From IMG/VR virus record IMGVR_UViG_3300018962_000001, positions 140,686 to 204,685 of that record: 64,000 nucleotides of DNA; one strand, written 5' to 3'. Both the position numbers and the translations under genes were made by a program. Below are positions 42,077-64,000 of this stretch, piece after piece (position 1 is the stretch's first letter; each line of letters opens with the position of its first letter). The notes beneath the pieces were generated by a model. It was not told the origin of the DNA, searched no databases, and saw only the letters and a list, made by a program, of their open reading frames with translations.

Positions 42077-42101
42077 CTTGCGCGCCGGAATACGCTAAGA
42101 T
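42073..42101 (+). promoter_or_regulatory. SigA-type promoter of the same family as those at 58-62 kb
   Basis: TTGACT-TGCGCGCCGGAATACGC-TAAGAT. Confidence 0.7.
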
Positions 42102-42129
42102 GAGTGAGTAGCAAGACAGGAGCGCACGT

Positions 42130-42783: not shown

Positions 42784-42784
42784 C

Positions 42785-43102: not shown

Positions 43103-43115
43103 AAGGAGCGTGTGC

Positions 43116-46137: not shown

Positions 46138-46601
46138 ATCTCAGTATGAACCTGCTGGCCGCGCTAAACACCTATTTCGCCTTCCAGACCATGCCACACC
46201 AGCACGGCACGGTCCAGGTGGTTGGATGGCGCGATGACCCCACGCGCCAGCGGGTCTGTGCCGCGCTGACGGCTACTGCCGAGGAGGATGGGTGGCGGAT
46301 CGCCATCCGTTCGGACGGTATTGCCCTGTTTCGTGATGACGAGTCCCATCTCATCACCGGCCCGATCGAGATTCCACGCCACGCGCCCGGACGGATTCCT
46401 ACCCGGCTGGCGGAGTATCTCTGGACCTATACGTGTCTGTGTTTGGGTGATCCGCGCATGACCGGGCCAATTGCCCTGTTTGCCCTGTCGGTGGATGCCG
46501 ACGCCCACCGGGAGCAGCTTGCCAGCACGTATCACCAACGCGAGGTGGTGCTCCTTGGCTTCGACGACTGGTGTGATCGTTTTGAAGGAGGATCGGTCTA
46601 A
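46134..46601 (+). CDS. Tandem paralogue 2 of 3
   Basis: GGAGG RBS; LSMNLLAALNTYFAF. Confidence 0.75.
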   Translation: MNLSMNLLAALNTYFAFQTMPHQHGTVQVVGWRDDPTRQRVCAALTATAEEDGWRIAIRSDGIALFRDDESHLITGPIEIPRHAPGRIPTRLAEYLWTYTCLCLGDPRMTGPIALFALSVDADAHREQLASTYHQREVVLLGFDDWCDRFEGGSV

Positions 46602-46861
46602 TGCGCCTGAGTGCTGCGATGAAAGCCGCGATTAATACCTATTATGCGTTCCGGCGGACCCCAACCCGCGTGGCAACACTGGAACGTGGTGGATCGCTCT
46701 ACAACGTCGGCTGGCCCGACAGTGCGACCAAGGAGCGGATCTGCCAACACGTGTGTGATGTTGCCGCTACGCACGGGATCAGTGTGTCGATTGTGCCGGG
46801 GACCATCTTCCTCCGGCGTGGCACGCAACGCCTGCAAGTGAATGGACCAATCGAGCCATGA
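46601..46861 (+). CDS. Tandem paralogue 3 of 3
   Basis: AGGAGG RBS; LSAAMKAAINTYYAF. Confidence 0.75.
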   Translation: MRLSAAMKAAINTYYAFRRTPTRVATLERGGSLYNVGWPDSATKERICQHVCDVAATHGISVSIVPGTIFLRRGTQRLQVNGPIEP

Positions 46862-47733
46862 GTGACCACCGAACCCTGCGCAGCGATGGGACGCTGCGCT
46901 ATGCTGATGGAATCTACCGACTCGCGCAGTTCGAGGGCGGCGACCCTGACGGCGAGTGGTGGAATCAACGAGTTGATCCGTATCTAGGAAAGCGGGTGGA
47001 GGTGGAGCTGGACGACGGGATTCAACTCGGAAAATTGGCCGTGTCTGATCCACGCACGGGCGACTTCCTCTTTTATATGTTTCGCGATCAGGACGTTGGT
47101 CCGCCGCCGCCGCCACTGGATACCCAGGTGGCGGAAGATGGCGCGGTGTATTATTCCTGGCGCTGGTGGATGCCGGAAGCCCCCGCTTCAGTCTGGCGGC
47201 GCTGGATCGGCAAGGTGGTGCATCTCCATGATGATCCCGACGCGCCCCAGGATCGAGTTCAGGTCGTTGATCCGGCGACCGGCACCACCCTGTGGTGGGC
47301 GCTCATCGTGCCACTCCCGCCGCGCGATCCCCTTGCGCGACCGACGCGGCAACCAACCGTGATCGACAAACTCCAGGAGGCTCTCACGGGTCTCGAAGCG
47401 ATGCAGGCGCAGATTGATCGGTGGCGCGACCAGCTCACCTGGCTGGTCGATGCCTGGGATCAAGATCTGGGCACCCGCATTGATCCCGATCACCTGATCG
47501 ACCTGATCGCCGACTTCGCCGGTATTCCTGGGCGCGGCCCCAAGGAACGCGCCGACGTGGGGACGTTTACCGTGCGACTTTCTGCGGAGCAGATCGCGCT
47601 GCTGCGTACGGCGACGCAGGCAGACGCGCAGCACGTCCTCCCCGCCATCCTGTCGCAGCTCACGATCGCGGCACGGGCGCGATCGGCGCACGGCCTCATC
47701 GATCTCCGGCAGCCGTCCCCGCCCCGCCCCTAA
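46858..47733 (+). CDS. Hypothetical protein, 291 aa
   Basis: ATGA overlap; last gene of the plus-strand block. Confidence 0.7.
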   Translation: MSDHRTLRSDGTLRYADGIYRLAQFEGGDPDGEWWNQRVDPYLGKRVEVELDDGIQLGKLAVSDPRTGDFLFYMFRDQDVGPPPPPLDTQVAEDGAVYYSWRWWMPEAPASVWRRWIGKVVHLHDDPDAPQDRVQVVDPATGTTLWWALIVPLPPRDPLARPTRQPTVIDKLQEALTGLEAMQAQIDRWRDQLTWLVDAWDQDLGTRIDPDHLIDLIADFAGIPGRGPKERADVGTFTVRLSAEQIALLRTATQADAQHVLPAILSQLTIAARARSAHGLIDLRQPSPPRP

Positions 47734-48539
47734 CGAAACACCACCTGTGGCGCGGTGGTCAATGGATCAAGCTGGACCACCCGCCGCCACTGCTGGCCGA
47801 TTCGCCACGGATGGACGTGATCCAGATCGGTAAACAAGGTCCGACCCAGCAGTGGCCCCAGCAGTGGCGCACAGGTGTCGAGCAGCCGAGGAGCCAGGGT
47901 CGAACTGGATACGCACAGCACCACAAAGCGCCGGGCCGCGCCCGCGCCCTCGGCTGCGCGCCGATACATCCGCAGCTTCTCCTCCCAGACCCCGATCCGC
48001 CGTGCCCGATCCACCTCCAGATAGTACTGGATGGCTCCCTTCGGATGCTCAAGGGAAAAGACCGCATCCGGCGTGGAGGTATCGGATTCTTCCCGCAGGC
48101 GTGGCGCAAGCTGCCAGCCTTGCAATCCAGTCGGCGTGGTTTCCTCCAGACGGCTCCGCACCGCCGCATACACGCGCCCGACATCAAGCCGCTGCTGAAG
48201 CGCCTCATCGGACTCTGGAGGCATCGCGACATACCGGATCGTGGCCTCTGGGCGGCCCGTGGTGACATGCAGCCGCTCAGCACCCCGCGCCGTGAGGCCA
48301 TAGGCGATCTCGGCCCGTCCAGGCCGTTGCAGGCGCTGGAGATAGCCCGCGCGCGTCAATCGCCGCAGCCGATCGTACAGCCACGAGGCGGCGGGGACGC
48401 GCCCGCCATCCTCGCCGGTGCGCGTCCGCCAGCCGGTGTAGTGCAGCCATTCGATGGCCGGGACCGTAAGATACTGGGCGTCCGCCAGGCTCCCAAACAT
48501 CGCCAGATCGCGATCCGTCACTTCAACGCCCACCGTCAT
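47730..48539 (-). CDS. Replication-relaxation (Replic_Relax-like) family protein
   Basis: TDRD..F..L...YLT, RLRRL...GYL, Y.LT..G, PDAVF...YYLEVDR...EKL..Y motifs; GGAGG RBS. Confidence 0.7.
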   Translation of the reverse strand: MTVGVEVTDRDLAMFGSLADAQYLTVPAIEWLHYTGWRTRTGEDGGRVPAASWLYDRLRRLTRAGYLQRLQRPGRAEIAYGLTARGAERLHVTTGRPEATIRYVAMPPESDEALQQRLDVGRVYAAVRSRLEETTPTGLQGWQLAPRLREESDTSTPDAVFSLEHPKGAIQYYLEVDRARRIGVWEEKLRMYRRAAEGAGAARRFVVLCVSSSTLAPRLLDTCAPLLGPLLGRTLFTDLDHVHPWRIGQQWRRVVQLDPLTTAPQVVFR

Positions 48540-48762
48540 GCGAATCCTCCGATAAGACCGTGATCGAGTCAAACGCGCCGATCTCGATCCACAGATCGTC
48601 CAACCGATCAGTCCTGGGAACCTGGAATCGCTCGCCCGTGGTCATAGGCGGAATCTCGCCTACCACACGTCCATGCAACACGATCTTCAATCCCACGCTT
48701 AGCTGTTCATGGAAGATCGGCTCATCCCCGCTTGGCTGTTCATCGAATATCGGCTCGTCCAT
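48523..48762 (-). CDS. Hypothetical protein, 79 aa
   Basis: GGAGG RBS. Confidence 0.55.
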   Translation of the reverse strand: MDEPIFDEQPSGDEPIFHEQLSVGLKIVLHGRVVGEIPPMTTGERFQVPRTDRLDDLWIEIGAFDSITVLSEDSHDGGR

Positions 48763-48922
48763 TATCCCTCCGCGCTGGACCCGTCAGATACCCCAGGAGA
48801 TCCTAGACTTCCGCACAGGTTGACGCATATTCTAGGAGATCGCGCCGACTTTTGCAAATCCGTGTCGCACTTTGCGAAGTTTTGGGGAAAGAGAAGTAAG
48901 ACAGGTATATAAGGAGGCCATC

Positions 48923-49213
48923 ATGGGGTTTGTCGATCTTCGATTTCACACGGAACAGAGTTGCAGCTGGTGCCACACGATGAACGCGACCACCGTGCAG
49001 CGCTGCGCGCGCTGCGGCCACGATGCGCACCAGCCACGGATGGTGTGTACCTGCCCACGCTGTCAGGGCGGCTGGCAACCGTTGGGGCTACAAAAACACC
49101 ACGCGGAAGCGGATCGCGCCGACCAGTCGCCAAAACACCGCGAGGTACGGGATCAGGACGGAGGTGACGATCATCTCGGCGATATGCGCGGGCCGGTGCG
49201 AGGTGCCGGTTAA
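48923..49213 (+). CDS. Cys-rich zinc-ribbon protein, 96 aa
   Basis: AAGGAGG RBS; CSWC, CARC, CTCPRC. Confidence 0.65.
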   Translation: MGFVDLRFHTEQSCSWCHTMNATTVQRCARCGHDAHQPRMVCTCPRCQGGWQPLGLQKHHAEADRADQSPKHREVRDQDGGDDHLGDMRGPVRGAG

Positions 49214-50142
49214 GCGCTCCAGACAAAAATCATGATCCAGAGGATCGCCAGCGTTGCCAAAAATAGGGCGATGACGCCAGCTCCCGCAACGCTGGCGATC
49301 CCGGCCAGCACGGTGCTGATCACAATCGCATAATAGTGGCCGGGAGGCCAGCGCTGAATCTGCGCCCGATACAGGGCGGGGTATTTTTTATACAGGAGCG
49401 CATTGTATTGTGACTTGCGTTGTTGCCCAATCGACACGCCCCACGGGGCAGGGCGGATCGGATGGACGACGATCGCCTCCGGTGCGGGAACGACCCGCAT
49501 CCCTGCCGTGAGCAGCGTAAAGTACAGGTCGCTATCTTCACGCCAGGCGGCGCGGTAGCGTTCATCAAAGCCGTCGATCGACTCTAAGGCTTGGCGCTTC
49601 ACAAAACAGTTCGCGGTGATAAATCCGAGACCGGCGAGGCCAGCGGCATTTCGTTCATAATCCGTTGGCACCGCCGGGAGGGGCATCGTCGTCAACCCAA
49701 AGGCCGCTGCCGCCTCGCCGGTGTCGATGGCTGCCACGCCCGACGCGAGCCAGTCCGGATCAGGCACGGTGTCATCGTCCGTAAAGGCGATAATGATCCC
49801 CTCGGCGCTGCGCCAGCCCACATTCCGGGCCGCCGCCGGGCCAGCAGGAGATCCCGGCTGTCCGGCGCGCAGGTAGCGAAGCCGCCGTCCGGTGATCACC
49901 GCAGGTTGCTCGTGATGCCGAATCAGCGCGAGCATTCCGGCAGCGGACATGCCTGCGTCCTCCACCACCAGCACCTCGTAGGCAAACGATACGCGCTGGT
50001 GCATCACTGCGGCGACGCACCGATCCAGGAGATCGAGTCGTCGATAGGTTGGGATGACCACCGACACCAGCGGACGAGCAAACGGGACCTGTTTGGCCCG
50101 ATGCTCCACCGCCCCGTGAGTCCACCGATTCTGCCGATCCAT
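49210..50142 (-). CDS. Glycosyltransferase family 2
   Basis: VSVVIPTY, GPAAARN.G, FTDDD (DxD) and REDSDL motifs; C-terminal hydrophobic segments. Confidence 0.9.
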   Translation of the reverse strand: MDRQNRWTHGAVEHRAKQVPFARPLVSVVIPTYRRLDLLDRCVAAVMHQRVSFAYEVLVVEDAGMSAAGMLALIRHHEQPAVITGRRLRYLRAGQPGSPAGPAAARNVGWRSAEGIIIAFTDDDTVPDPDWLASGVAAIDTGEAAAAFGLTTMPLPAVPTDYERNAAGLAGLGFITANCFVKRQALESIDGFDERYRAAWREDSDLYFTLLTAGMRVVPAPEAIVVHPIRPAPWGVSIGQQRKSQYNALLYKKYPALYRAQIQRWPPGHYYAIVISTVLAGIASVAGAGVIALFLATLAILWIMIFVWSA

Positions 50143-55094: not shown

Positions 55095-55421
55095 TTAGGA
55101 TTCGTTCACCGCGCGGGCACGGCGCACCGGGATCATTAACTCGATCGCATGCTGCCGCTCAAACCGCTCGTACACGTGCGCGACCACACTCCCACCGTCC
55201 AGTTGCGCCGATCCAAGATACCGGCGCGGCAGCTCCGACATCGGCTTCCCGGTCCCGAAGGTTTCAATCCAGCGTTCTTCCGCCGGAAAATCGGTCTCCA
55301 CTTCTGCCCACAGACAGGCTTCGTTCTCCTGAGCCTGCACCGTGAGAATCTGCGCCCCGCGCGGCATCCTGATCGACTGGAGACTTTGCCGCGTGAGCGG
55401 ATATTTGTAGATGGTTCGCAT
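55095..55421 (-). CDS. Widespread small phage protein (DUF7352-like)
   Basis: MRTIYKYPL...MPRGAQILTVQ...CLWAEV...FGTG...YLGS.Q...V.HV.E pattern. Confidence 0.65.
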   Translation of the reverse strand: MRTIYKYPLTRQSLQSIRMPRGAQILTVQAQENEACLWAEVETDFPAEERWIETFGTGKPMSELPRRYLGSAQLDGGSVVAHVYERFERQHAIELMIPVRRARAVNES

Positions 55422-56508: not shown

Positions 56509-56955
56509 TTACTCGTCGCGGGCCGGGGTCCGCCACCGGGTCCGTTCCCCCTGCTCACGGGCCTTCCGGGCCAACGCTAACGCCCGCTGCTCACCATGAC
56601 GCGGGATGGAAAACTTGGTCCGTCGTTGCTTGCCAGTGGTTGTGGTCCAGGTGGCCTCGTAGTATTCGGTATGGCCTTCGCGCCGCCGCCGAACACCGGG
56701 CACGCCCGTGGAAGAATGGATGATCCCCAGCACCTGCCGCTCGGTGCGCGGCTTGCCAATATCGCGCTCGGTCGCATTGCGCCAGTCGAGCGCGGCCCCC
56801 AAGGCCGCTAACCGATCGCCATAGACCTGATCCGAGAAGAACTTGGAGCGACGTTCGCCTTTCCATTGAATGCGCACAAAATATCCATGCGTTCCCTTGG
56901 CGGCACGGTCGATGCGCGTCAGGTTCTTGTGCTTAACGGTGCGTGGTCGCTTCAT
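56509..56955 (-). CDS. AP2-domain DNA-binding protein, 148 aa
   Basis: Two AP2-like repeats (GYFVRI..KGERRSKFFS...; TGV.GV...YEATW...RRTKFS...GE..AL.LA). Confidence 0.75.
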   Translation of the reverse strand: MKRPRTVKHKNLTRIDRAAKGTHGYFVRIQWKGERRSKFFSDQVYGDRLAALGAALDWRNATERDIGKPRTERQVLGIIHSSTGVPGVRRRREGHTEYYEATWTTTTGKQRRTKFSIPRHGEQRALALARKAREQGERTRWRTPARDE

Positions 56956-57200
56956 AGCATCCTCCGCGACATCATCGGAAGCACGACATACACGCCATAG
57001 GCATCGGAGTCGTTCGCAAGCTCCTGCCAACACGCAGCTTCGGTGGGGTGATCCTCGAATCGACCGTAGGGACCGCCATACCCACTTTGCTGCGGCTCCT
57101 TCAGCAACCCTTCCCGGATCTCATAGATCCGGTACCAGACGCGGACGTTGGATGGTGGCCCGGATGGCGATTCGGGCACTGATTCCGGCGGTTGACACAT
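56952..57200 (-). CDS. Hypothetical protein, 82 aa
   Basis: ATGA overlap with the AP2 gene; AAAGGA RBS. Confidence 0.6.
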   Translation of the reverse strand: MCQPPESVPESPSGPPSNVRVWYRIYEIREGLLKEPQQSGYGGPYGRFEDHPTEAACWQELANDSDAYGVYVVLPMMSRRML

Positions 57201-57659: not shown

Positions 57660-57755
57660 CGTGGTCCTCGCGTTCAGGTCGATGCGGGAGGAATTGCTCC
57701 CCCCCGCGCTCAGATCAAACATCCAGCAAGTCAAAAATTCGTATAGTTAGGATAG

Positions 57756-57787
57756 GGGGGGATTCGGGCGCGGTACCCGAATCCCCC
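57756..57787 (-). terminator. Hairpin after 57796..58170
   Basis: GGGGGATTCGGG...CCCGAATCCCCC 12 bp stem. Confidence 0.65.
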
Positions 57788-57795
57788 GATCGATT

Positions 57796-58170
57796 CTAGC
57801 GCGGGCGGAAAAAATCGCCGCGCGCGATCGCGCTATCGATCGGCGCGGCGATCGGATCGTTTAATTCGCCGCGCCCCGATCGGGTATTTTCGTAGGCGGC
57901 GGCGGCGGCGGGTAGCGGGCGGCGATTCGCGCGCGCCCAAATTTTATCCGCGCGATCGATACCGCGATTCGCGGCGGCGTACGCGGCGGAATCGGATAGT
58001 AGATCCGGGCGGGCGTAAAATTCGGCGGCGGCTAGTACGATCGGATCGGGGTAAAAATCGCGGCGATCGATAATTAAGCCGTTAAGCGCGTAGCGTAGAT
58101 AAATTTGGGCGGCGGCGGATTCGATTCGGGCTAGGATCGTAGCGGTAGCGGTAGCGGTAGCGGTAGTCAT
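57796..58170 (-). CDS. Compositionally extreme protein 1, 124 aa
   Basis: Own promoter, GGGGA RBS and terminator. Confidence 0.75.
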   Translation of the reverse strand: MTTATATATATILARIESAAAQIYLRYALNGLIIDRRDFYPDPIVLAAAEFYARPDLLSDSAAYAAANRGIDRADKIWARANRRPLPAAAAAYENTRSGRGELNDPIAAPIDSAIARGDFFRPR

Positions 58171-58221
58171 TTTGGTATCCCCTAGTAGCGGCGCGGCGGG
58201 CGCGATTCATTTGATAGGTAT

Positions 58222-58250
58222 AGTATAGCGTATATCGGCGCGCTAGTCAA
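58222..58250 (-). promoter_or_regulatory. Repeated strong promoter, copy 1
   Basis: TTGACT-AGCGCGCCGATATACGC-TATACT, then TATCAAATGAATCG leader. Confidence 0.85.
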
Positions 58251-58389
58251 TCAAAATCTAGTAAAAATAGCGGCGGATTTTGTATAGATATATTAACTAT
58301 ATCTAGGCGGATCGGGCGCGCTAGGCGGCGCGCTAGGGGCGATAGGGGCGCTATCCGCGCCCCTATACGCGATCGGGGGATACGCGGCG

Positions 58390-59043
58390 CTACGCGGCGC
58401 GGGTAGCCTTAAGGCCCGTCTTAACCGTACCGTGCCCCTTAATTTCTACCGCGATCGGCGTATCGCGTACTACGCGGGCGCGTACCGTATAGCGGATACG
58501 GGTAGCGGTACGATCCGCTACGATCGCCTTAATTTCGCCGTAGATCGCGCCGCCGGTAGCGGCTATATCGCGGATAAAATCGGCGCGGGCGCTATCGATC
58601 GTACTATCGATCGGGCGGCTATAGCGGATAAATTCGGATCGGGCGCATTTCGGTACCGCTACCGGATAGACGCGGGCGCGGCGGGCGCTAGGCGCTACGG
58701 GCGCGGGCGCTACGGGCGCGGGCGCGGTATAGATCCGGGCGCGGCGCGGGCTATCGTAGGCATGCGATAGTAGGCGGGCGATTCGGGCGCGGCGGGCGGA
58801 TTCGTAGCGGGCGGCGGCGCGGCGGGCATTAATTTCTAGCGATTCGCGGGCGTACGTACTAGCCGGATAGGTACCCGCCGAAAATTCGCGCCCGGTACGC
58901 GGATCGGTTAAGTAGGCCGTATTTTCAAATTGGCCGGGATTCGGGCGGCGGCGATCGTAGCGAATCGCGTAGGTAGTACCGTTAATTTCGATCGTAGCGG
59001 CGGCGGCGGATTTTTTGGCGGCGGTAGTAGCGGTAGTAGTCAT
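58390..59043 (-). CDS. Compositionally extreme protein 2, 217 aa
   Basis: Own promoter; GGGGA RBS. Confidence 0.75.
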   Translation of the reverse strand: MTTTATTAAKKSAAAATIEINGTTYAIRYDRRRPNPGQFENTAYLTDPRTGREFSAGTYPASTYARESLEINARRAAARYESARRARIARLLSHAYDSPRRARIYTAPAPVAPAPVAPSARRARVYPVAVPKCARSEFIRYSRPIDSTIDSARADFIRDIAATGGAIYGEIKAIVADRTATRIRYTVRARVVRDTPIAVEIKGHGTVKTGLKATRAA

Positions 59044-59101
59044 TTCCGTATCCCCTAGATACTAGGCCGCTATCGGTAGCGGCGATTCATTTGATAGCGG
59101 T

Positions 59102-59130
59102 AGTATAGCGCGTATCGGCGCGTACGTCAA
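59102..59130 (-). promoter_or_regulatory. Repeated strong promoter, copy 2
   Basis: TTGACG-TACGCGCCGATACGCGC-TATACT, then TATCAAATGAATCG. Confidence 0.85.
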
Positions 59131-59298
59131 GTATAGATTTGGTAAAAATAGGCCGGATTTTGTATAGATTTGGTAAAAATTTTATACGGGTATGGTTGTA
59201 AAAAATCGGTAAAAAAGTACCGGAATCAACCGCCCGGATCGACATAAGGAGGCGCGCATGTGCGCGTGTGTGAGCGTGCGTGTGCGCGCCGATTCGCA

Positions 59299-59480
59299 CG
59301 TACGGCCAACCAGCCATTCTCAACGAAGCGCCTGCGCGTGCGCGTTGATACCCGCGTGCGGCCAACCAGCGATTCCCAACAAACCGCCTGCACGCATCCA
59401 TGAATACCCGCGTACGGCCAACCATGCAGTTCCGAGAATGTCCCTGCGCCCCTGTGTTGATGCCCGCGTGCGGCCAACCA
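59299..59480 (+). repeat. Four copies of CGTRCGGCCAACCA at exact 56 bp spacing
   Basis: Copies start at 59299, 59355, 59411 and 59467. Confidence 0.85.
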
Positions 59481-59487
59481 TCTATGG

Positions 59488-59775
59488 TCAGGGGAGCGGA
59501 TCAGGATCATGCCAGCCATGCGGGCTATCCGCATAACAACCACGAAACACCAACGAGTCCCCAAGCACCGACGCTTCCGCATCGGTTCGGCGCGTCTTGA
59601 TACGCCAACCCAACCGCCGACAAACGGCGACCATCTGCTCGAACTGGTCGGGCGCGGCCTGGATCGCCAGGCCGCCGGGCACGATGTCGGAGGAAATGCC
59701 AACCTCGGCCAAGGCCGCTTGCGCAGCACACGCCTGCTGATAGGTGCGCGGTTGAATGGTGTACTCTTTGGTCAT
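59488..59775 (-). CDS. Hypothetical protein, 95 aa
   Basis: GAGGAG RBS. Confidence 0.65.
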   Translation of the reverse strand: MTKEYTIQPRTYQQACAAQAALAEVGISSDIVPGGLAIQAAPDQFEQMVAVCRRLGWRIKTRRTDAEASVLGDSLVFRGCYADSPHGWHDPDPLP

Positions 59776-59846
59776 GGTCTAACTCCTCGGCAGAATCCCT
59801 GCCCGATGCGAGGGCCGGTCGTTGTGATCGGCCCTCGGTACCCGAC

Positions 59847-60089
59847 CTACCAATCGTAGTCAGCAGCAATCGACACGAAGCTGGACGAGCCGACCGCGAA
59901 TGCGTGATCCTCAACACGGGAATCGGCATCGGTCGCAGCCTCGATCATGGTTGACAGCACCCAGCACTCGGCAGGATCGGTCGTTTCCGCGTGGGCGGCG
60001 GCGGCGGCGTCGAGCACTTCTTGCCGGGCGGCAGGACTCAACTTGGCGGCAAGGGCAAGCAAGGCAACATATTCGGTTGATGACCTCAT
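59847..60089 (-). CDS. Hypothetical acidic protein, 80 aa
   Basis: CGAAAGGAACCCGCC-ATG leader; promoter TTGACA-N17-TAAGCT at 60167-60139. Confidence 0.7.
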   Translation of the reverse strand: MRSSTEYVALLALAAKLSPAARQEVLDAAAAAHAETTDPAECWVLSTMIEAATDADSRVEDHAFAVGSSSFVSIAADYDW

Positions 60090-60196
60090 GGCGGGTTCCT
60101 TTCGTGCTCGGCGCTGGGCCGGTATCTATCGTGCTTGGAGCTTACCGCTGGTCGGCCAGTATGTCAAGGGGTTACAAGAACGACCTGCCGAACGCT

Positions 60197-60481
60197 TTAC
60201 GAATCCGCCAGGGCGCGCGGAGCGAGGTGGTTGGCGACATCGCGCGATTGCTCGGCCAGCTGCCGCAGCGTGTCGGCCAGCGGGCCAGCCGCAGGGGTGA
60301 TTCGGGCCAGGGCCGCAGCCTCGGCGGCCAACCGCAGGACATCTGCCGCAATGCAGGTTGCGAGGGTGGCGGCAACCTGCGCCTCGTGCTCGGCATTGGT
60401 ATGCTGCGCGCCGATCCGGCAAAACGCGCATGGTTGGGGGAGATTTGGTGACACGACCTGATTCCTTTCGTATGCAAGCAT
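60197..60481 (-). CDS. Hypothetical protein with CAFC motif, 94 aa
   Basis: Follows the 37 aa peptide gene; start uncertain. Confidence 0.5.
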   Translation of the reverse strand: MLAYERNQVVSPNLPQPCAFCRIGAQHTNAEHEAQVAATLATCIAADVLRLAAEAAALARITPAAGPLADTLRQLAEQSRDVANHLAPRALADS

Positions 60482-60493
60482 GGTTGGAGAGGG

Positions 60494-60607
60494 CTATGCC
60501 CCCTCCTCCTCGTCCTCGTCCCGGTTGTCCTGGTCGGCGGCGGCATCTTCGCGTTCGAGTCGCGCTACGGCTTCCTCGGCTTCTCGGTCGGCCCAATCGC
60601 GGTACAT
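60494..60607 (-). CDS. 37 aa highly acidic peptide (not in ORF track)
   Basis: MYRDWADREAEEAVARLEREDAAADQDNRDEDEEEGA; same CGAAAGGAACCCGCC-ATG leader as 59847..60089; promoter TTGACG-N17-TATGAT at 60673-60645. Confidence 0.7.
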   Translation of the reverse strand: MYRDWADREAEEAVARLEREDAAADQDNRDEDEEEGA

Positions 60608-60677
60608 GGCGGGTTCCTTTCGCTCCATCGTCGTATCTGAGCACATCATACCGGAGGTCGATCGGAACGTCAAGGGG

Positions 60678-61001
60678 TTATGATACGACCTTTGATCGAC
60701 CCGATTCCCTGGGGGTCCGGGCGAGCCGCGCCCTGGCGTCGGCGATTAAGGCGACCAGATCGGCAGGCTTGCGCCGTGGGGGGAGCGACTGCTCTAGGGC
60801 AACCACGGCGGCCTCAACCCCTTGGGCGGCGCGTTCTCGCGCCTCGCAGGTTTGCCGGGAGGGCATCCATACCTGGCCGAATCCATAGGCGGGCATAGGC
60901 CGCTTCGACCGATCAACGGCTCGGTTGGCCTCCTGCAAGGTTTGGAGCGCTGCGCGAAGACAGTCGGCGCGATACGCACGGGTGGTTGCTCGATGGCCCA
61001 T
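60678..61001 (-). CDS. Hypothetical protein, 107 aa
   Basis: AAAGGAGG RBS. Confidence 0.7.
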   Translation of the reverse strand: MGHRATTRAYRADCLRAALQTLQEANRAVDRSKRPMPAYGFGQVWMPSRQTCEARERAAQGVEAAVVALEQSLPPRRKPADLVALIADARARLARTPRESGRSKVVS

Positions 61002-61028
61002 GACGGCCTCCTTTCGGTTGCAGGTTGC

Positions 61029-61054
61029 CGCCGGGCGGATTAATCCGCCCGGCG
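61029..61054. terminator. Perfect 26 bp palindrome after 61065..61520
   Basis: CGCCGGGCGGATTAATCCGCCCGGCG. Confidence 0.7.
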
Positions 61055-61064
61055 ATTCGCGGAT

Positions 61065-61520
61065 CTAGCGGGTTGATTTTTCCCCGTAGCGCGGGTCGAG
61101 TCGCGGTAGCGCGTTAAGCGCGGCGGCTAGGGCCGAATCGTAGATCGCGGCTACGGCGGCGGCGTACCGATCGAGTCGATCCGAATCGTAGGCCGCGCCC
61201 GATTCGAGGTCGGCGGCGATCGCGGCGGCGGATTCCGATTCGTAGCCGCCGCCTAGCGCGGCAAAAATCGATTCGGCGGCGGCGGCGGCGGTCGATAGGA
61301 TATACAAATCGCTATAGGATTCGAGTCCGGCGGCGGCTAGGATTTCGCCAAATCCTACGGCGCTATCCCCCCCGATATACCCGGCGCGATTCCCCGCTAC
61401 GATTCCGGCGGAAATCCCGGCGGCGGCGGCGGCGATTAATTCGACCGAATCTAGGGGATAGACGGCTAGGGCGGCGGCGGCGGCGGCGGCGGATTTTGGG
61501 GCGATTTGGATCGGGTTCAT
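61065..61520 (-). CDS. Compositionally extreme Ala-rich acidic protein 3, 151 aa
   Basis: Own promoter and terminator. Confidence 0.75.
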   Translation of the reverse strand: MNPIQIAPKSAAAAAAALAVYPLDSVELIAAAAAGISAGIVAGNRAGYIGGDSAVGFGEILAAAGLESYSDLYILSTAAAAAESIFAALGGGYESESAAAIAADLESGAAYDSDRLDRYAAAVAAIYDSALAAALNALPRLDPRYGEKSTR

Positions 61521-61572
61521 TAATTTTTCCCTACTAGCCCGTATCGCTACGGGCGATTAATTTGATAGCCGT

Positions 61573-61601
61573 AGTATAGCGCAAAAATACGCGCTAGTCA
61601 A
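61573..61601 (-). promoter_or_regulatory. Repeated strong promoter, copy 3
   Basis: TTGACT-N17-TATACT, then TATCAAATTAATCG. Confidence 0.85.
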
Positions 61602-61722
61602 GGGAGGTTGACGGGGAAAAAGAAGGTCGATCCGACGAATCGCACCGGGCCGGGTTGGATCGGCGCTGCGCAGCGGCGGTAGGTTGGCGGGCGGGTTGGC
61701 ATTACCCAACCCGCCCGGCGAT

Positions 61723-62163
61723 CTAGGGATTAAGCAGGTTGGTTACGATTCCCCCCGGATCGGTACGGTAAAATGCGATCAACTTCCCCCCGGAAATGCA
61801 ACCTTCGAAGGTCGGGCCGAGGGCCGCGTCTAGGTACGTATCCAAATCGGGAATCGCGGCGGCGGATTCGGCGCGCGGGCAACCTTCGGCTACCCATTTA
61901 ACGTAGCCCGCCGCGATTCCAACATGGGCGGCGGCGATTCCGCGCGCGATCCGGGGCGGATCAACCGGAATCCCGTAGGCGGCAAATCCGGCGGCGGCGA
62001 TCGGCGGCGCGGCGATCGGCGGCGCGGGCGCGGCGGGCGGCGCGGGCGGATAGGGATACGTTAAGCGATCGTAGGTATAGGCGGCGGCGGATTCGCGGAT
62101 CATTTCAAATTCGGCGGCGTAGGATTCGGGCGAATTGTTGGAATCGTAGACTCGGATAGGCAT
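61723..62163 (-). CDS. Compositionally biased protein 4, 146 aa
   Basis: Own promoter; GGGAG RBS; hairpin 61689-61716 downstream. Confidence 0.75.
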   Translation of the reverse strand: MPIRVYDSNNSPESYAAEFEMIRESAAAYTYDRLTYPYPPAPPAAPAPPIAAPPIAAAGFAAYGIPVDPPRIARGIAAAHVGIAAGYVKWVAEGCPRAESAAAIPDLDTYLDAALGPTFEGCISGGKLIAFYRTDPGGIVTNLLNP

Positions 62164-62217
62164 TTTCGGACTCCCGTAGCGGTAGCGGCGCGTAGGCCGG
62201 ATTTATTTGATACCGCT

Positions 62218-62246
62218 ATATTACCGCGTATCGGCGCGCTAGTCAA
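62218..62246 (-). promoter_or_regulatory. Repeated strong promoter, copy 4
   Basis: TTGACT-AGCGCGCCGATACGCGG-TAATAT, then TATCAAATAAATC. Confidence 0.8.
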
Positions 62247-62559
62247 GGGTAACCTTCGCCCGATCGCGCAGGTCGATCCGCCGATCGCACCCGGCGTACT
62301 GCTGAAGGTCGGGCTTGACAACCAGGCCCGTGGGCAGCGATGCTGCTGGCAGGGGCCACGCCAGGGGCCAGCAGCACGCTGAGCTGCGTCCACCTTCTGA
62401 CCTGCACCCACCTGGACAGGTGGACTTGTACGTACGGCCAACCATTCAAACCCAGCGATGCGCAGCTTGGCGCGTACGGCCAACCATCCAAACCCAGGGA
62501 TGGCCCGACCTTGCAGCGATCCGGTTTCACTGAACCTGCGCCAGCGTCCACGGTCACGC

Positions 62560-62588
62560 TTGACGACCGCACCGCATAGCGCTATGCT
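62560..62588 (+). promoter_or_regulatory. SigA-type promoter
   Basis: TTGACG-N17-TATGCT. Confidence 0.7.
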
Positions 62589-62625
62589 GCCCCTATCGAA
62601 TGACGAGTCTACGAGGAGGATGTCC

Positions 62626-62859
62626 ATGATCGTCTGTGTGCCGGTATCACCCGCCGAAGAAGCCCGCATTGCCGCGCTGAACCTGCCGGATCGGGTCTGG
62701 CGTATCCGTCTTGACCCGCACGAAGAACGCGAGATCGCCGCTCCGCTGGTCGAGCTGGCGCAGCATCGGTACCTCCAAGCCTTAGACCTGGACCGGGATG
62801 CTCGTGCCTGGGACCGGGTGCAGGCGATCCCAGGCACCGACCCCCATCCGCAGCGATAG
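62626..62859 (+). CDS. Hypothetical protein, 77 aa
   Basis: GAGGAGG RBS after the promoter. Confidence 0.7.
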   Translation: MIVCVPVSPAEEARIAALNLPDRVWRIRLDPHEEREIAAPLVELAQHRYLQALDLDRDARAWDRVQAIPGTDPHPQR

Positions 62860-62950
62860 CCCTCCAGGTCCACCTGCGCAGACAGAGCGATGTGCGCGTA
62901 CGGCCCACCACGTGTGCGCACCGATTCGCAGGTCCGGCCCACCATCGGGT

Positions 62951-63241
62951 TTATGCCGCACGGCGCTCCACAATCGACTCCCCGACGACCCAGTTCATCG
63001 CCACCGCCACATGTGCCGCCATCGCGACCGGATCGTGCCCGTCGCAGGTCGCGATGGCAAGAATATAGCTCCAAACGAGGACTGCATCTCCCGCGCATGC
63101 CCATCCCGACACGTGCAGCCCTTGCCCGGCGAGCCGCCGGGCAAGGTGTTCTCCTTGATCGACCGTCAACCGAACGCGATCGACGGTGTACACGACTCGG
63201 ATCGGCGCTAGGGGATCGTTCCCCGGTTGATCATCGGTCAT
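62951..63241 (-). CDS. Hypothetical protein, 96 aa
   Basis: GGAGG RBS; overlap with the upstream stop. Confidence 0.6.
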   Translation of the reverse strand: MTDDQPGNDPLAPIRVVYTVDRVRLTVDQGEHLARRLAGQGLHVSGWACAGDAVLVWSYILAIATCDGHDPVAMAAHVAVAMNWVVGESIVERRAA

Positions 63242-63476
63242 GGTGCTTCGCGCCTCCCCGACGATGCCAGCTTCGAATATCGACCACATGCTGGGTGCTG
63301 GTGTACAGCATCCAGGTTGCCCCGGCCCGCTCAAAGATGATACCGGTCCAGCCGGTATCGAAGGCCATCATCATGCGGAGGCTCAGGATTTCACGGTCGA
63401 GCACCGTTGCCGCCTCGTCATGGAGGTCGGGCGGCAGCTGAAACCAGCCCTGGGGTGTTTCGAGTGCGATCACCAT
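63231..63476 (-). CDS. Hypothetical protein, 81 aa
   Basis: GGAGG RBS. Confidence 0.65.
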   Translation of the reverse strand: MVIALETPQGWFQLPPDLHDEAATVLDREILSLRMMMAFDTGWTGIIFERAGATWMLYTSTQHVVDIRSWHRRGGAKHHDR

Positions 63477-64000
63477 GCTGGGCGATCCTCCAGCCGAACG
63501 ACCGATCCGGGTACGATGTCGTTGAAGACTGCGGCCAGCCGACCGGCCACCTCTGCGGGATCTTGCCCGTGGATCACGCCCTGATCAATCAACACCTCCC
63601 AGATCACTTCGGAGTCGCCCAGGCCGAAGTCGATTCGATAGGTCCACATCGGGGGTGCCGCCGCCTGGAGGATCGTCGCTGCCACGGCCCGCGAGTGGAC
63701 GGCAAAGGGTTGAATCTGATAGGTCGCATGGACGGCTTCAAGCGCGGGATTCGGCGGCAGCTCCGGGTTGGGATACCGATCCAGTACCCACGCCCGGCGA
63801 CACAACCGCCGCCGGTGCCAGGCCGCGCGCACCACAGTGCGGGCCTCGACGATCGCCGGTTGTCGATCGGGTGCGTCGCGCAGAAGCCGACCCAGCTCGT
63901 GCTCGGCCTGCGCGACGGCGAGATTGGCTTCCTGCCAGGCGGTTTCGATCGCGTCCGGTTGCGCAGGCCCAATCAGGAGATCCAGGAGCGGCGAAACCGC
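63470..64000 (-). CDS. Partial hypothetical protein entering from the right edge
   Basis: Frame is open from 64000 to the stop at 63470. Confidence 0.65.
   Translation of the reverse strand, partial: AVSPLLDLLIGPAQPDAIETAWQEANLAVAQAEHELGRLLRDAPDRQPAIVEARTVVRAAWHRRRLCRRAWVLDRYPNPELPPNPALEAVHATYQIQPFAVHSRAVAATILQAAAPPMWTYRIDFGLGDSEVIWEVLIDQGVIHGQDPAEVAGRLAAVFNDIVPGSVVRLEDRPAW

What the first reader, a model, noticed from the sequence alone, without database searches (positions are those of the whole stretch)
57750..62260. DNA almost purged of CA/TG and of all S-W-S trinucleotides
Seen: in 57750-59240 and 61030-61600 (weaker to 62260), A/T bases occur almost only in runs of two or more, so CAC, CAG, CTC, CTG, GAC, GAG, GTC and GTG vanish, while CG, TA, GATC and CGCG are abundant. 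Manual count for 57796-58170: 3 CA/TG and 1 S-W-S in 375 bp, and two of these four come from the start codon region. The bias covers genes and spacers, the proteins have very few Q, H, C, W or M residues, and the intervening 59.25-61.0 kb looks ordinary. Inference: selection on the DNA itself to erase recognition sites of many restriction-type systems at once (GGWCC, CCWGG, GCWGC, CTGCAG, GTCGAC and many CA-containing type I/III sites), as expected for first-entering genes. An unknown motif-sensing defence or a DNA modification is an alternative.
Basis: partly seen in the sequence, partly recalled or inferred. Interest (0 to 1): 0.8.

Follow-up and report, generated by a model that had tools for sequence, protein, structure and literature searches.

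The report
Four CA/TG-free early phage genes
Four small early genes of an uncultured 225-kb desert-crust phage have been rewritten, codon by codon and even residue by residue, so that their DNA almost never contains the step CA/TG or an A/T block made only of A or only of T; this points to an unknown factor that reads very short features of double-stranded DNA.

Summary
In 57,755-59,131 and 61,030-61,602 (weaker in 61,680-62,247), CA+TG falls to 4-25% of expectation and S-W-S to 0-7%. In 46,290 control windows from 2.5 Mb of other DNA these never fall below 52% and 22%. The purged DNA is four minus-strand cassettes, each with a sigma70-type promoter, a leader hairpin, an ORF of 124-217 aa and a 3' hairpin. 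The rule is broader than reported: no CpA/TpG, and every A/T block holds both A and T (1 exception vs 208; ordinary DNA 997 vs 1,818). It is strand-symmetric, covers non-coding parts and has survived ~30% divergence of the promoter copies. ORF1 sits at the theoretical minimum. ORF2 is a recoded paralogue of an ordinary gene ~10 kb upstream (1.8 vs 17.7 forbidden words per 100 nt). Erasure of many restriction sites in first-entering DNA is not supported. The whole phage, cassettes included, already avoids 14 six-base palindromes (7 observed, 324 expected), while palindromes overall are enriched in the cassettes. Best reading: long-term selection on the duplex DNA of a few autonomous early genes against an unidentified factor that reads 2-3-bp features.

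The parts
57757..57787 (-). Cassette 1: 3' hairpin (12-bp G+C-rich stem, 7-nt loop) just after the ORF1 stop. It marks the sharp downstream edge of the purged DNA.
   Evidence: Read from the sequence. Predicted as a hairpin in the RNA fold. No forbidden words. No U-tract follows directly, so termination is inferred, not shown.
57796..58170 (-). Cassette 1: ORF1, 124 aa, pI 9.2, 24% Ala, no detectable relative.
   Evidence: The frame fixed by SD+ATG has 0 stops; the other five frames have 3-8. It has 4 forbidden words, equal to the theoretical minimum of 4, against 51.6 +/- 5.1 expected. All four are unavoidable: the ATG start (2), Trp78 and Gln22. No Pfam or PHROG hit.
58222..58250 (-). Cassette 1: sigma70-type promoter TTGACT-17-TATACT, followed by the conserved leader (TATCAAAT...) and a GGGGAT Shine-Dalgarno-like box (58,171-58,221).
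   Evidence: Top-scoring hit of the promoter scan, 10 of 12. Conserved block in four copies. The surviving CA/TG/GAC words lie in the -35 box and the leader.
58342..58366 (-). Cassette 2: 3' hairpin (10-bp stem) after ORF2. The spacer 58,252-58,389 is as purged as the ORFs (2 forbidden words in 138 nt).
   Evidence: Sequence; count of forbidden words per feature.
58390..59043 (-). Cassette 2: ORF2, 217 aa, pI 10.9. It is a recoded paralogue of an ordinary-composition 163-aa gene of the same phage, L324:3951-4442, about 10 kb upstream.
   Evidence: tblastn E = 1e-11, 37-40% identity over the full length. Forbidden words per 100 nt: 1.8 against 17.7. All 5 aligned Gln and both Cys are replaced. 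0 stops in frame against 4-19 in the other frames.
59102..59130 (-). Cassette 2: promoter TTGACG-17-TATACT, with leader hairpin 59,066-59,083 and an A/T-rich, half-purged upstream block 59,132-59,225.
   Evidence: The leader hairpin differs from that of cassette 3 by paired changes (GCCGCTA..TAGCGGC against GCCCGTA..TACGGGC).
61030..61053 (-). Cassette 3: perfect 24-nt palindrome (hairpin) after ORF3. It marks the downstream edge of the second purged block.
   Evidence: Sequence; no forbidden words.
61065..61520 (-). Cassette 3: ORF3, 151 aa, pI 4.2, 30% Ala, predicted all-helical at low confidence. CA/TG is purged, but some GAC/GTC/CTC words are tolerated.
   Evidence: 19 forbidden words against 64.6 expected, minimum 2. 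0 stops in frame against 1-10 in the others; G at codon position 1 = 0.54. AF2 pLDDT 45.
61573..61601 (-). Cassette 3: promoter TTGACT-17-TATACT with leader hairpin 61,537-61,554.
61688..61717 (-). Cassette 4: 3' hairpin (12-bp stem) after ORF4. This spacer is not purged.
   Evidence: Sequence. 13 forbidden words in 120 nt for 61,603-61,722.
61723..62163 (-). Cassette 4: ORF4, 146 aa, pI 4.7. It is the least purged; A-only and T-only dinucleotide runs are tolerated.
   Evidence: 24 forbidden words against 61.6 +/- 5.5 expected, minimum 7. The rule on A-only/T-only runs is relaxed here, 15 against 24. No relative in 5.8e9 proteins or in an exhaustive HMMER pass over 1.84e9 representatives.
62218..62246 (-). 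Cassette 4: promoter TTGACT-17-TAATAT. It marks the upstream edge of the purged DNA.
   Evidence: The profile returns to ordinary values above about 62,300.
59226..61029 (-). Context, not part of the anomaly: five ordinary-composition small genes and a 4 x 56-bp repeat lie between cassettes 2 and 3.
   Evidence: observed forbidden words are about equal to expectation.

Best explanation
The purged DNA consists of four self-contained early expression cassettes, each with its own strong host-type promoter, leader hairpin, ORF and 3' hairpin. They belong to an uncultured phage of at least 225 kb.

Their double-stranded DNA has been kept for a long time, by selection, free of two things. One is the CpA/TpG step. 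The other is any A/T block that has only A on one strand and only T on the other. To achieve this the phage uses rare synonymous codons (CTA, GTA, GAA, GAT). It has also replaced residues that cannot be encoded within the grammar (Gln, His, Cys, Trp, Met), and keeps them only where the protein needs them.

I infer that the grammar makes these few genes invisible to a factor that reads very short (2-3 bp) features of duplex DNA. I also infer that the factor's effect is local, dose-dependent and not lethal to the genome as a whole. It would block or damage the template of a gene in proportion to the number of such features in it. Candidates are a DNA-binding or roadblock protein, a reversible base modification, nicking, or a step-specific DNA ligand. 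The products of the four genes would then have to be made while that factor is active, which suggests counter-defence or takeover functions.

Shown: the grammar, its strand symmetry, its extent over coding and non-coding DNA, the coding status of the ORFs, the recoding relative to a paralogue, its persistence through divergence, and its independence from the phage's ordinary restriction-site avoidance.

Inferred: that selection (not a mutational mechanism) maintains it, that the agent acts on duplex DNA locally, and what the proteins do.

Rough split within this reading: local reversible block by a host factor about 0.2; the phage's own device for telling self from non-self about 0.1; nuclease avoidance about 0.1; other about 0.05.
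For: 1. The size and sharp edges of the anomaly coincide with promoter-to-hairpin units.
2. It is strand-symmetric: CA 8.3/kb and TG 9.7/kb. On the sense strand of the transcribed parts CA = 12 and TG = 13. A duplex-level cause explains this without further assumptions.
3. It covers leaders, spacers and hairpins as well as ORFs. The survivors sit in the -35 box, the conserved leader, the start codons and conserved residues.
4. Codon choice is at or near the theoretical optimum: ORF1 4 observed = 4 minimum against 52 expected; ORF2 12 observed, minimum 6, 96 expected. Leu CTA is 49% against 4% elsewhere, Val GTA 65% against 5%, Glu GAA 100% against 45%.
5. ORF2 against its ordinary paralogue: 1.8 against 17.7 forbidden words per 100 nt, synonymous recoding at conserved residues, and all aligned Gln and Cys replaced, with His kept only in the conserved KGHG motif.
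6. The four promoter/leader copies differ at 12-19 of 59 positions. Yet each keeps only 3-4 forbidden words, where random substitution would give about 8.3 (P <= 0.017 per pair). CG and TA, the enriched steps, are each one transition away from CA/TG, so the purge must be maintained actively.
7. The cassettes also lack all ten grammar-compatible palindromes that the rest of the phage avoids: 0 observed against 13-25 expected, P < 0.0005. They therefore evolved in the same host setting.
8. The genes are real. The designated frames have 0 stops while the other frames average 4-11 (joint P about 4e-13), and base composition by codon position is gene-like.
9. Locality: only 4 of about 40 small early genes are purged, although the ordinary ones also have sigma70-type promoters.
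Against: - No agent with this specificity is known to me or was found. DarT2 reads a T-N-T-C type motif and DarT1 has no known consensus. Daunorubicin prefers WCG/CpG, which is abundant in the cassettes.
- This is a single genome. No relatives or population variants were available, so selection cannot be measured from substitutions.
- A strongly biased, locally targeted mutational process combined with purifying selection on the proteins would leave the same static pattern.
- The functions of the four proteins are unknown.
- The purge is graded (ORF1 and ORF2 strongest, then ORF3, then ORF4) and the spacer after ORF4 is ordinary. This is untidy for a simple all-or-none requirement.
- The genome termini and the order of DNA entry are unknown.
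Confidence: 0.45

Rival explanations
1. One reading: these are first-entering genes whose DNA was purged to remove the recognition sites of many restriction-type systems (type I, II, III) at once.
For: - The phage is clearly under heavy restriction pressure: 14 six-base palindromes show 7 observed against 324 expected.
- CCWGG, GGWCC and GCWGC are absent from the cassettes.
- T5-like phages offer a precedent for early-entering DNA that has to cope with restriction (PMC10644984).
- From memory, not tested here: many type I, III and IIS sites contain CA/TG or an A flanked by G/C.
Against: - Palindromes are 2.4-fold enriched and CTAG 18-fold enriched in the cassettes.
- The named 5-bp sites are not avoided in the ordinary DNA, so nothing selects against them in this host range.
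- The word repertoire of the cassettes falls only about 2-fold.
- The cassettes are interleaved with ordinary genes, preceded by about 14 kb of them, and lie 13.7-18.2 kb from the contig end.
- Cleavage anywhere is lethal, so a local purge gives no protection unless DNA enters in a specific order, and the layout does not support that.
Confidence: 0.12
2. Selection at the RNA level: the mRNAs of these genes avoid cleavage by one or more endoribonucleases with short specificities (toxin-type or phage shut-off RNases), or avoid internal start codons and Shine-Dalgarno-like sites, so that they stay translatable when other mRNAs are destroyed.
For: - The effect is local to transcription units, which is natural for an mRNA property.
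- No NTG start codons or GGAG-type boxes occur inside the mRNAs, and the Shine-Dalgarno boxes themselves are GGGGA or GGGAA in three cassettes.
- The 5' coding part of the ORF1 mRNA is predicted to be unstructured.
- A recoded back-up copy of an early gene would fit a scheme of mRNAs that resist shut-off.
Against: - CA and UG, and each triplet and its reverse complement, are purged equally on the sense strand. This would need several RNases whose specificities happen to form a reverse-complement-closed set.
- UA, the classic labile step in RNA, is 4-fold enriched.
- The block upstream of promoter 2, which its own transcript does not cover, is half-purged.
Confidence: 0.1
3. A locally targeted, context-specific mutational process (editing or biased repair that turns CA/TG into CG or TA and removes isolated A/T), counteracted only where the protein or a signal needs the word.
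For: - Forbidden words survive only at functionally constrained positions. This is also what strong mutation bias plus purifying selection would give.
- CA/TG is the transition intermediate between the two enriched steps, CG and TA.
- The degree of purge is graded among the cassettes.
Against: - G+C content is unchanged, which would require two opposite biases in exact balance.
- The ORFs are intact although TAG and TAA are abundant in the other frames.
- The edges follow cassette borders, and no such process is known in bacteria or phages.
- No deaminase, reverse transcriptase or repair gene was recognised in about 76 kb.
- The rule that every A/T block must contain both A and T, at any length, is hard to obtain from a nearest-neighbour mutational bias.
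Confidence: 0.12
4. Foreign origin: the cassettes are morons imported from a donor whose DNA has this composition throughout.
For: - They have a moron-like build, with their own promoter and hairpin and a composition unlike the flanks.
- The four ORFs have no close relatives.
- Their promoter family differs from that of the neighbouring early genes.
Against: - ORF2 is a paralogue of a resident gene.
- The cassettes share the phage's own idiosyncratic avoidance of ten palindromes, 0 observed against 13-25 expected.
- No DNA with this grammar exists in 2.5 Mb of control loci.
- The promoter copies have diverged about 30% in place while keeping the grammar.
Confidence: 0.06
5. No function: low-complexity or repeat-derived DNA with chance open frames, or an assembly artefact.
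For: - Short tandem repeats and Ala-rich, low-complexity stretches are present.
- Open frames of about 120 codons arise by chance in DNA of this composition.
Against: - Three assemblers agree at even depth.
- The designated frames are open with joint P about 4e-13 and show gene-like codon-position structure.
- ORF2 has a full-length paralogue with conserved motifs.
- Restriction sites are avoided in the cassettes.
Confidence: 0.02

Closest known systems
Genome-wide restriction-site avoidance in phages (loss of short palindromes recognised by host type II enzymes)
   Same: Selection acts on the DNA sequence itself and is symmetric between strands. This phage shows the classical form very strongly (GCCGGC 0/45, GGATCC 0/37, CGGCCG 0/35 and others), and the cassettes obey it too.
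   Different: The cassette grammar concerns a dinucleotide step and the make-up of A/T blocks, not recognition sites. It is confined to four genes, palindromes are enriched in them, and the protein sequences were changed to satisfy it.
First-entering DNA adapted to defence: the first-step-transfer region of T5/BF23 and the leading regions of conjugative plasmids
   Same: Early, strongly expressed genes are thought to face defence before the rest of the element (PMC10644984; bioRxiv 10.1101/2025.04.03.647016, which tests motif depletion and codon adaptation in plasmid leading regions).
   Different: Here the purged genes are not contiguous and not at the contig end. They are surrounded by ordinary early genes, and they use codons that are rare in this phage instead of optimal ones.
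Morons and PeSL (promoter-early stem-loop) cassettes of T4-type phages
   Same: Small orphan genes are each flanked by a repeated early promoter plus stem-loop module, in a plastic early region (PMC2839356, PMC4122927). Here the four copies of the promoter-plus-leader-hairpin module are 68-76% identical and drive unrelated ORFs.
   Different: PeSLs and morons are defined by their mobility and regulatory build. No dinucleotide grammar is described for them. Shuffling between related genomes could not be tested because no relatives exist in the collections.
Nuclease-resistant transcripts that lack a short motif (for example ACA-less mRNAs that resist MazF), and CpG/UpA avoidance in RNA viruses
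   Same: Whole genes are recoded to remove a 2-3-nt word so that they escape a sequence-reading nuclease or sensor. (This is recalled knowledge, not tested here.)
   Different: Those biases are strand-specific (RNA). Here each word and its reverse complement are purged equally, and UA and CG are enriched.
Repeat-induced point mutation (RIP) of fungi
   Same: CpA/TpG is depleted and TpA enriched. (This is recalled knowledge.)
   Different: RIP is mutational, lowers G+C and destroys genes. Here G+C is unchanged, CpG rises, the ORFs are intact and a conserved His codon (CAC) is retained.
Short-context DNA modification by phages (Mu Mom acting on S-A-S-N-Y; 7-deazaguanine insertion at 2-3-nt motifs) and T4 Alc (elongation block on unmodified DNA)
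   Same: They show that phage-related factors can read contexts as short as an A flanked by G/C, and can distinguish classes of DNA for transcription. (This is recalled knowledge and only a lead.)
   Different: No such enzyme was recognised among about 70 ORFs scanned. Heavy restriction-site avoidance argues that the virion DNA is not generally modified. About 150 kb of the genome was not examined.

Membership tests
Classical restriction-site avoidance | The avoided words are enzyme recognition sites, typically 4-6-bp palindromes. | tested here: not met
   For the cassette-specific layer, the avoided units are CA/TG and S-A(n)-S blocks. Six-base palindromes are 27.3/kb against 11.4/kb, and CTAG is 10.9/kb against 0.61/kb. 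The separate genome-wide layer does meet this feature.
Classical restriction-site avoidance | The avoidance extends over the whole exposed genome. | tested here: not met
   CA+TG O/E is 1.08 in the rest of the window and never below 0.76 in any 400-nt window. CCWGG, GGWCC and GCWGC are at expectation in ordinary DNA.
First-entering (first-step-transfer or leading-region) DNA | Located at the end of the genome that enters first. | tested here: inconclusive
   The cassettes lie 13.7-18.2 kb from the end of the 224,726-bp contig and are transcribed away from it. The physical termini are unknown. The runs are held only as contigs, which show no molecule ends.
First-entering (first-step-transfer or leading-region) DNA | The adapted region is contiguous from the entering end. 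| tested here: not met
   About 14 kb of ordinary DNA precedes the cassettes and 1.8 kb of ordinary genes lies between cassettes 2 and 3.
Moron or PeSL-type autonomous cassette | Own promoter and own 3' stem-loop around a single small ORF. | tested here: met
   Four sigma70-type promoters are the best hits of the scan. Hairpins lie directly after each ORF. Termination itself is not shown.
Moron or PeSL-type autonomous cassette | A repeated regulatory module joined to unrelated ORFs. | tested here: met
   The four copies of the 66-nt module are 68-76% identical. The ORFs are not related to each other.
Moron or PeSL-type autonomous cassette | Presence or absence, or shuffling, between related genomes. 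| not testable with these tools
   No related early region exists in the collections. Capsid relatives are fragments only.
RIP-like or editing-type hypermutation | Loss of G+C and gene inactivation, with a C-to-T signature at CpA. | tested here: not met
   G+C is 0.57-0.66 against 0.61. CpG rises. The ORFs are intact with conserved motifs.
Motif-free, nuclease-resistant mRNA | The depletion is specific to the transcribed strand. | tested here: not met
   Sense-strand CA = 12 and TG = 13; CAG, CTG, GAG and GTG are all 0; CAC and CTC survive at 1 and 4.
Anti-restriction or DNA-mimic proteins (Ocr/ArdA type) as cargo | Sequence or fold similarity to a known anti-defence protein. | tested here: not met
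   No Pfam or PHROG hit. The atlas scores are at chance level. Fold searches gave nothing with E < 0.001. ORF3 and ORF4 are acidic (pI 4.2 and 4.7), which is only suggestive.

The most novel reading that the evidence does not exclude
The grammar is a sequence-encoded way of telling self from non-self at the level of template use. A protein or small DNA ligand, made by the host as defence or by the phage as a shut-off device, disables any duplex DNA in proportion to its content of CpA/TpG steps and A-only/T-only blocks. A handful of phage genes, including a recoded back-up copy of an ordinary early gene, are written in a restricted dialect that this factor cannot read, so they alone stay expressible. 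This would be a sequence-based counterpart of the base-modification trick by which T4 keeps its own DNA transcribable.
Probability: 0.25. Interest if true: 0.9.

Novelty: new variant of a known kind. Interest (0 to 1): 0.8.

Why it matters
If selection really keeps whole genes free of one dinucleotide step and of one class of A/T blocks, then some factor in phage-host conflict reads duplex DNA at a resolution of 2-3 bp. That resolution is far below anything in current catalogues of restriction, CRISPR or other defence systems. The phage's answer, rewriting a few key genes in a reduced dialect, would be a new counter-strategy.

The locus offers a ready-made experiment, because the same protein family exists in purged and unpurged form in one genome.

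It is also an extreme natural case of nucleotide-level constraint reshaping protein sequences: Gln, His, Cys, Trp and Met are almost eliminated. That is relevant to gene design and to detecting hidden selection on DNA.

Practically, a simple composition scan (CA+TG O/E below about 0.3 in G+C-rich DNA) could find more such genes, and through them the unknown factor.

Tried and rejected
- Nucleotide searches of GenBank phages found no match.
- A strict promoter/leader pattern in IMG/VR found only the source contig.
- A looser pattern in metagenome and viral contigs returned only chance hits in A/T-rich DNA, none with the grammar.
- A scan for the 16-nt repeat gave chance hits. A scan for the ordinary promoter module gave zero hits, because the IMG/VR copy of the contig ends before those promoters.
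- Homology searches for ORF2, ORF4 and two neighbouring genes found only the queries themselves.
- Pfam and PHROG gave nothing for the cassette proteins, and a PDB profile search gave nothing for the ORF2 family.
- Structure: ORF3 gave a low-confidence model. The paralogue's C-terminal domain was modelled confidently but has no significant structural neighbour. The atlas hits were at chance level.
- Reads: the runs are held only as contigs, so no variants, termini or expression data could be obtained.
- Ideas considered and set aside:
  - HIP1-type cyanobacterial palindromes: GCGATCGC is only about 3-fold enriched.
  - DarT ADP-ribosylation: its motifs do not fit.
  - Anthracycline chemical defence: daunorubicin prefers CpG, which is enriched here.
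  - Type I-E PAM avoidance: it explains AAG, ATG and GAG only.
  - Unusual mRNA structure: z = -1.6.
  - Phage tRNAs: none in the window.
  - ORF length alone as coding evidence: too weak, so it was replaced by the frame test.

Full report
**Observation.** Sliding counts confirm the finding at the stated coordinates. CA+TG falls from about 13 per 100 nt to 0-2 in 57,780-59,100 and 61,100-61,500. Values are intermediate up to about 62,250, and 59,226-61,029 is ordinary. In 57,780-59,225, CA is 8.3/kb and TG 9.7/kb against 67 and 61/kb in the first 57 kb. All eight S-W-S triplets are about 0, TA is 100/kb against 23, and CG is 169/kb against 107.

Observed/expected never falls below 0.52 for CA+TG or 0.22 for S-W-S. 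For the 12,306 G+C-rich windows the minima are 0.55 and 0.40. The cassettes reach 0.04 and 0.00.

The sequence is the same in a JGI assembly, an ENA assembly and a 131,875-bp Logan contig of even depth. It is therefore not an assembly artefact.

**What carries it.** The window is part of an uncultured phage from a biocrust metagenome. The contigs are 204,685 and 224,726 bp.
- It has a major head protein and giant virion-type ORFs, one with M23 peptidase and SLT domains.
- It has no nucleotide match in GenBank phages.
- Nearly all genes are on the minus strand.

The purged DNA is four minus-strand cassettes. Each has a sigma70-type promoter (TTGACT/G-17-TATACT or TAATAT); these four are among the best hits of an independent scan. 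Each also has a conserved leader with a short hairpin, a weak Shine-Dalgarno-like box (GGGGA, GGGAA or GGGAG), one ORF (124, 217, 151 and 146 aa) and a G+C-rich hairpin after the stop. The four regulatory modules are 68-76% identical. The ORFs are unrelated to each other.

**Coding status.** Length alone is weak evidence, because DNA of this composition gives chance open frames of about 120 codons. The frame fixed by the Shine-Dalgarno box plus ATG is the better test. It has no stop in any cassette, while the other five frames average 4-11 stops (joint P about 4e-13). Base composition by codon position is gene-like, with G at position 1 of 0.38-0.54.

**The grammar.** A/T runs flanked by G/C are almost always CTAC/GTAG, GATC, GAATC/GATTC, CTAG, CTATC/GATAG, GTAC and the like. 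GAAC/GTTC occurs once and GAAG/CTTC never, although neither contains CA/TG or S-W-S. Among A/T runs of 2 nt or more without CA/TG, cassettes 1-3 have 1 run made only of A or only of T against 208 mixed runs. Ordinary DNA has 997 against 1,818 (Fisher p = 2.5e-36).

So there are two rules:
- no CpA/TpG step;
- every A/T block must carry both A and T on each strand.

The few exceptions lie in the -35 box (TTGAC), the conserved leader, the ATG starts, and the codons for Trp, Gln, His and Cys. The purge is graded: ORF1 and ORF2 carry 1.1-1.8 forbidden words per 100 nt, ORF3 4.2 and ORF4 5.4, against about 18 in ordinary DNA.

**Not amino-acid composition alone.** Back-translating the four proteins with the phage's own codon usage gives 52, 96, 65 and 62 forbidden words (sd 5-7). 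The observed numbers are 4, 12, 19 and 24. The lowest number that any synonymous coding could reach is 4, 6, 2 and 7, so ORF1 is at the optimum. The proteins themselves allow 4-10 times fewer forbidden words per residue than their neighbours do. Codon use is shifted to codons that are rare in this phage: Leu CTA 49% against 4%, Val GTA 65% against 5%, Glu GAA 100% against 45%. Gln, Trp, His and Met are 2-10 times depleted.

**A natural control.** ORF2 is a full-length paralogue (37-40% identity, tblastn E = 1e-11) of a 163-aa gene of ordinary composition about 10 kb upstream (L324:3951-4442).
- Their DNA carries 1.8 and 17.7 forbidden words per 100 nt.
ORF2's does so twice: the ATG start and the His of the conserved KGHG motif.
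- All five aligned Gln and both Cys of the paralogue are replaced in ORF2, for example CAA or CAG to GAA.

This shows recoding of a real protein family. It excludes a chance ORF or a purely repeat-derived origin, at least for ORF2.

**Persistence.** CG and TA, the enriched steps, are each one transition away from CA/TG, so the state is mutationally fragile. Yet the four promoter/leader copies differ at 12-19 of 59 aligned positions and each keeps only 3-4 forbidden words, all in conserved signals. Random substitution at the same divergence gives about 8.3 (P <= 0.017 for every pair). The grammar has therefore been maintained over substantial divergence.

**Test of the restriction reading.** The ordinary 57 kb of this phage shows very strong classical site avoidance: GCCGGC 0 observed against 45 expected, GGATCC 0/37, CGGCCG 0/35, GGCGCC 0/33, CCCGGG 0/28, TGGCCA 0/25 and more. 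In all, 14 sites give 7 observed against 324 expected. Meanwhile GATC and CGATCG are 3.5- and 5-fold over-represented.

Two conclusions follow.
- The virion DNA is evidently exposed to type II enzymes, and so is probably not protected by a general base modification.
- The phage deals with restriction site by site.

The cassettes contain none of the ten avoided sites that their grammar would permit: 0 observed against 13 (maximal-order expectation) or 20-25 (Markov simulations), P < 0.0005. They have therefore evolved under the same host pressure, and the CA/TG grammar is an additional layer.

That layer does not look like site erasure:
- six-base palindromes are 2.4-fold enriched and CTAG 18-fold enriched in the cassettes;
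- CCWGG, GGWCC and GCWGC are at expectation in the ordinary DNA;
- the repertoire of 4-6-mers is only about halved.

The layout does not fit first-entering DNA either. The cassettes lie 13.7-18.2 kb from the contig end. They are preceded by about 14 kb of ordinary small genes, are separated by 1.8 kb of ordinary genes, and are the only purged DNA in about 76 kb. The ordinary early genes, the ORF2 paralogue included, have their own sigma70-type promoter family (ATGACCCCTTGAC-17-TAWGMT). Use of the host polymerase is therefore not what sets the four genes apart.

**Mechanism.** The equal purge of every word and its reverse complement, and the inclusion of spacers and hairpins, point to double-stranded DNA as the level of selection.

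Cleavage anywhere destroys a genome. A purge limited to four genes therefore makes sense only if the agent's effect is local, scales with the number of motifs in a gene, and leaves the rest of the genome recoverable. Such an agent could be a DNA-binding or roadblock protein, a reversible modification, nicking, or a step-specific DNA ligand. It could be made by the host as defence or by the phage as a shut-off device.

I commit to this reading at 0.45. The identity of the agent is inference only. I checked two concrete candidates and neither fits:
- DarT2 reads a four-base motif with T at the first and third positions, and DarT1 has no known consensus (PMC11543638).
- Daunorubicin prefers 5'-WCG-3' and CpG steps, which are enriched here (PMC2536678).

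Ligands that prefer TpG.CpA steps do exist, namely indolocarbazoles and pixantrone (PMC6009268). DNA intercalators are an established chemical anti-phage defence that acts early in infection (PMC13250531). A ligand-type agent is therefore conceivable but unsupported.

**Rivals.**
- An RNA-level cause is natural for a gene-local effect, but it needs a reverse-complement-closed set of RNase specificities and has to tolerate a 4-fold excess of UA.
- A targeted mutational process would give the same static picture. It would, however, have to keep G+C constant, respect cassette borders and produce the length-independent rule on A/T blocks, and no such process or enzyme was seen.
- Foreign origin is contradicted by the resident paralogue and by the shared avoidance of restriction sites.
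- An artefact or non-coding DNA is excluded by the tests above.

**What the proteins do is unknown.** There are no family, structure or language-model leads. ORF3 and ORF4 are acidic (pI 4.2 and 4.7), and ORF1 and ORF2 are basic.

**Comparison with known systems.** In build, the cassettes resemble morons and the PeSL promoter/stem-loop cassettes of T4-type phages (PMC2839356, PMC4122927). In logic, they resemble motif avoidance and the adaptation of leading regions (PMC10644984; bioRxiv 10.1101/2025.04.03.647016). I found no described case of a gene-local, strand-symmetric purge of a dinucleotide step with accompanying protein recoding. I therefore rate it a new variant of a known kind (motif avoidance), with about a one-in-four chance that it reflects a new kind of discrimination between DNAs.

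**Limits.**
- This is one genome with no relatives, no population variants and no expression data.
- The physical termini are unknown.
- About 150 kb of the phage was not examined.
- Statements about the recognition sites of type I, III and IIS enzymes, Mom, Alc, RIP and MazF rest on my own knowledge and were not tested here.

Noticed in passing
window 1-57000 (also 59226-61029, 62300-64000 and L002:1-8163): There is extreme genome-wide avoidance of six-base palindromes: GCCGGC 0/45, GGATCC 0/36.6, CGGCCG 0/34.6, GGCGCC 0/32.9, CCCGGG 0/28.4, TGGCCA 0/24.6, GGGCCC 0/14.8, CCATGG 0/12.5, CTCGAG 0/11.7, ACGCGT 0/11.5, CTGCAG 0/10.2, TCCGGA 3/27.6, ACCGGT 2/19.2 and AGGCCT 2/14. TGCA and GGCC are also strongly under-represented. 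This implies a host range rich in type II restriction systems and unmodified virion DNA.
   Followed up: yes
window 1-57000: GATC is 3.5-fold and CGATCG 5-fold over-represented relative to base composition, while GGATCC is absent. The phage prefers GAT, TTT and TAT codons despite 61% G+C. The reason is unknown: codon usage, or positive selection for a methylation site.
   Followed up: partly
window 59291-59499, 62423-62505, 62889-62963; also L324:1794: A 16-nt motif, CGCGTRCGGCCAACCA (minus strand TGGTTGGCCGYACGCG), occurs 8 times in ordinary non-coding DNA beside the cassettes. Four copies lie at an exact 56-bp period just upstream of cassette 2, and it occurs nowhere else in the first 57 kb. 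It could be an operator array, iterons or a phage-specific promoter.
   Followed up: partly
L324:1-13000 (beyond the window's right edge): This stretch holds an array of about 30 small same-strand orphan genes. Many have their own conserved promoter/leader module (ATGACCCCTTGAC-17-TAWGMT ... GAGCTTGAAAGGAA-ATG). It looks like a plastic early region with two distinct families of regulatory module.
   Followed up: partly
window 58136-58165, 58680-58730, 61975-62050: There are short in-frame tandem repeats inside the purged ORFs: GGTAGC x4 giving (Thr-Ala)n, a 15-nt unit giving PAPVAPAPVAP, and a 15-nt unit giving APPIAAPPIAA. ORF2 has low-complexity insertions relative to its paralogue. The laid contigs show 3-nt indels at 58,703-58,734, which may come from other G+C-rich organisms.
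   Followed up: no
window 478-7185, 9070-16800, 28553-33613: There are three giant minus-strand ORFs (2,235, 2,576 and 1,686 aa). Only the 2,576-aa one has recognisable domains (M23 peptidase and SLT lytic transglycosylase near its C-terminus). The other two have no Pfam match.
   Followed up: no
window 35400-49200: A mixed-strand block carries DUF932, Replic_Relax, an HNH endonuclease and a family-2 glycosyltransferase (49,210-50,142). These plasmid- or ICE-like genes sit inside a phage genome.
   Followed up: no
window 56509-57033 and about 55095-55421: An AP2-domain protein (below Pfam's cut-off, E = 3e-6) and a DUF7352 protein lie just downstream of cassette 1.
   Followed up: no
window 25394-26455: The major head protein has relatives at 57% identity on a 4-kb contig binned as Thermomicrobiales, at 33% in a Deinococcus pimensis scaffold (a likely prophage), and at 39-61% on 13 IMG/VR fragments. 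This is a weak clue to a host among desert-soil Chloroflexota or Deinococcota.
   Followed up: partly
window 63995-64000; L324 against L325: The JGI contig ends exactly at the window's end, with 5 mismatched terminal bases. A second JGI contig (11,908 bp) covers the adjoining DNA and differs from the ENA contig by one 9-nt indel (163 against 160 aa in one gene). This is a population variant or a break in the assembly graph.
   Followed up: no
window 58082-58210 (minus strand): In cassettes 1 and 2 the conserved leader contains an ATG (TCAAATGAATC) close to the predicted transcript start. It opens a 42-codon out-of-frame ORF in cassette 1. It is not conserved in cassettes 3 and 4 (TTA and TAA at that position), so it is probably not functional.
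   Followed up: no
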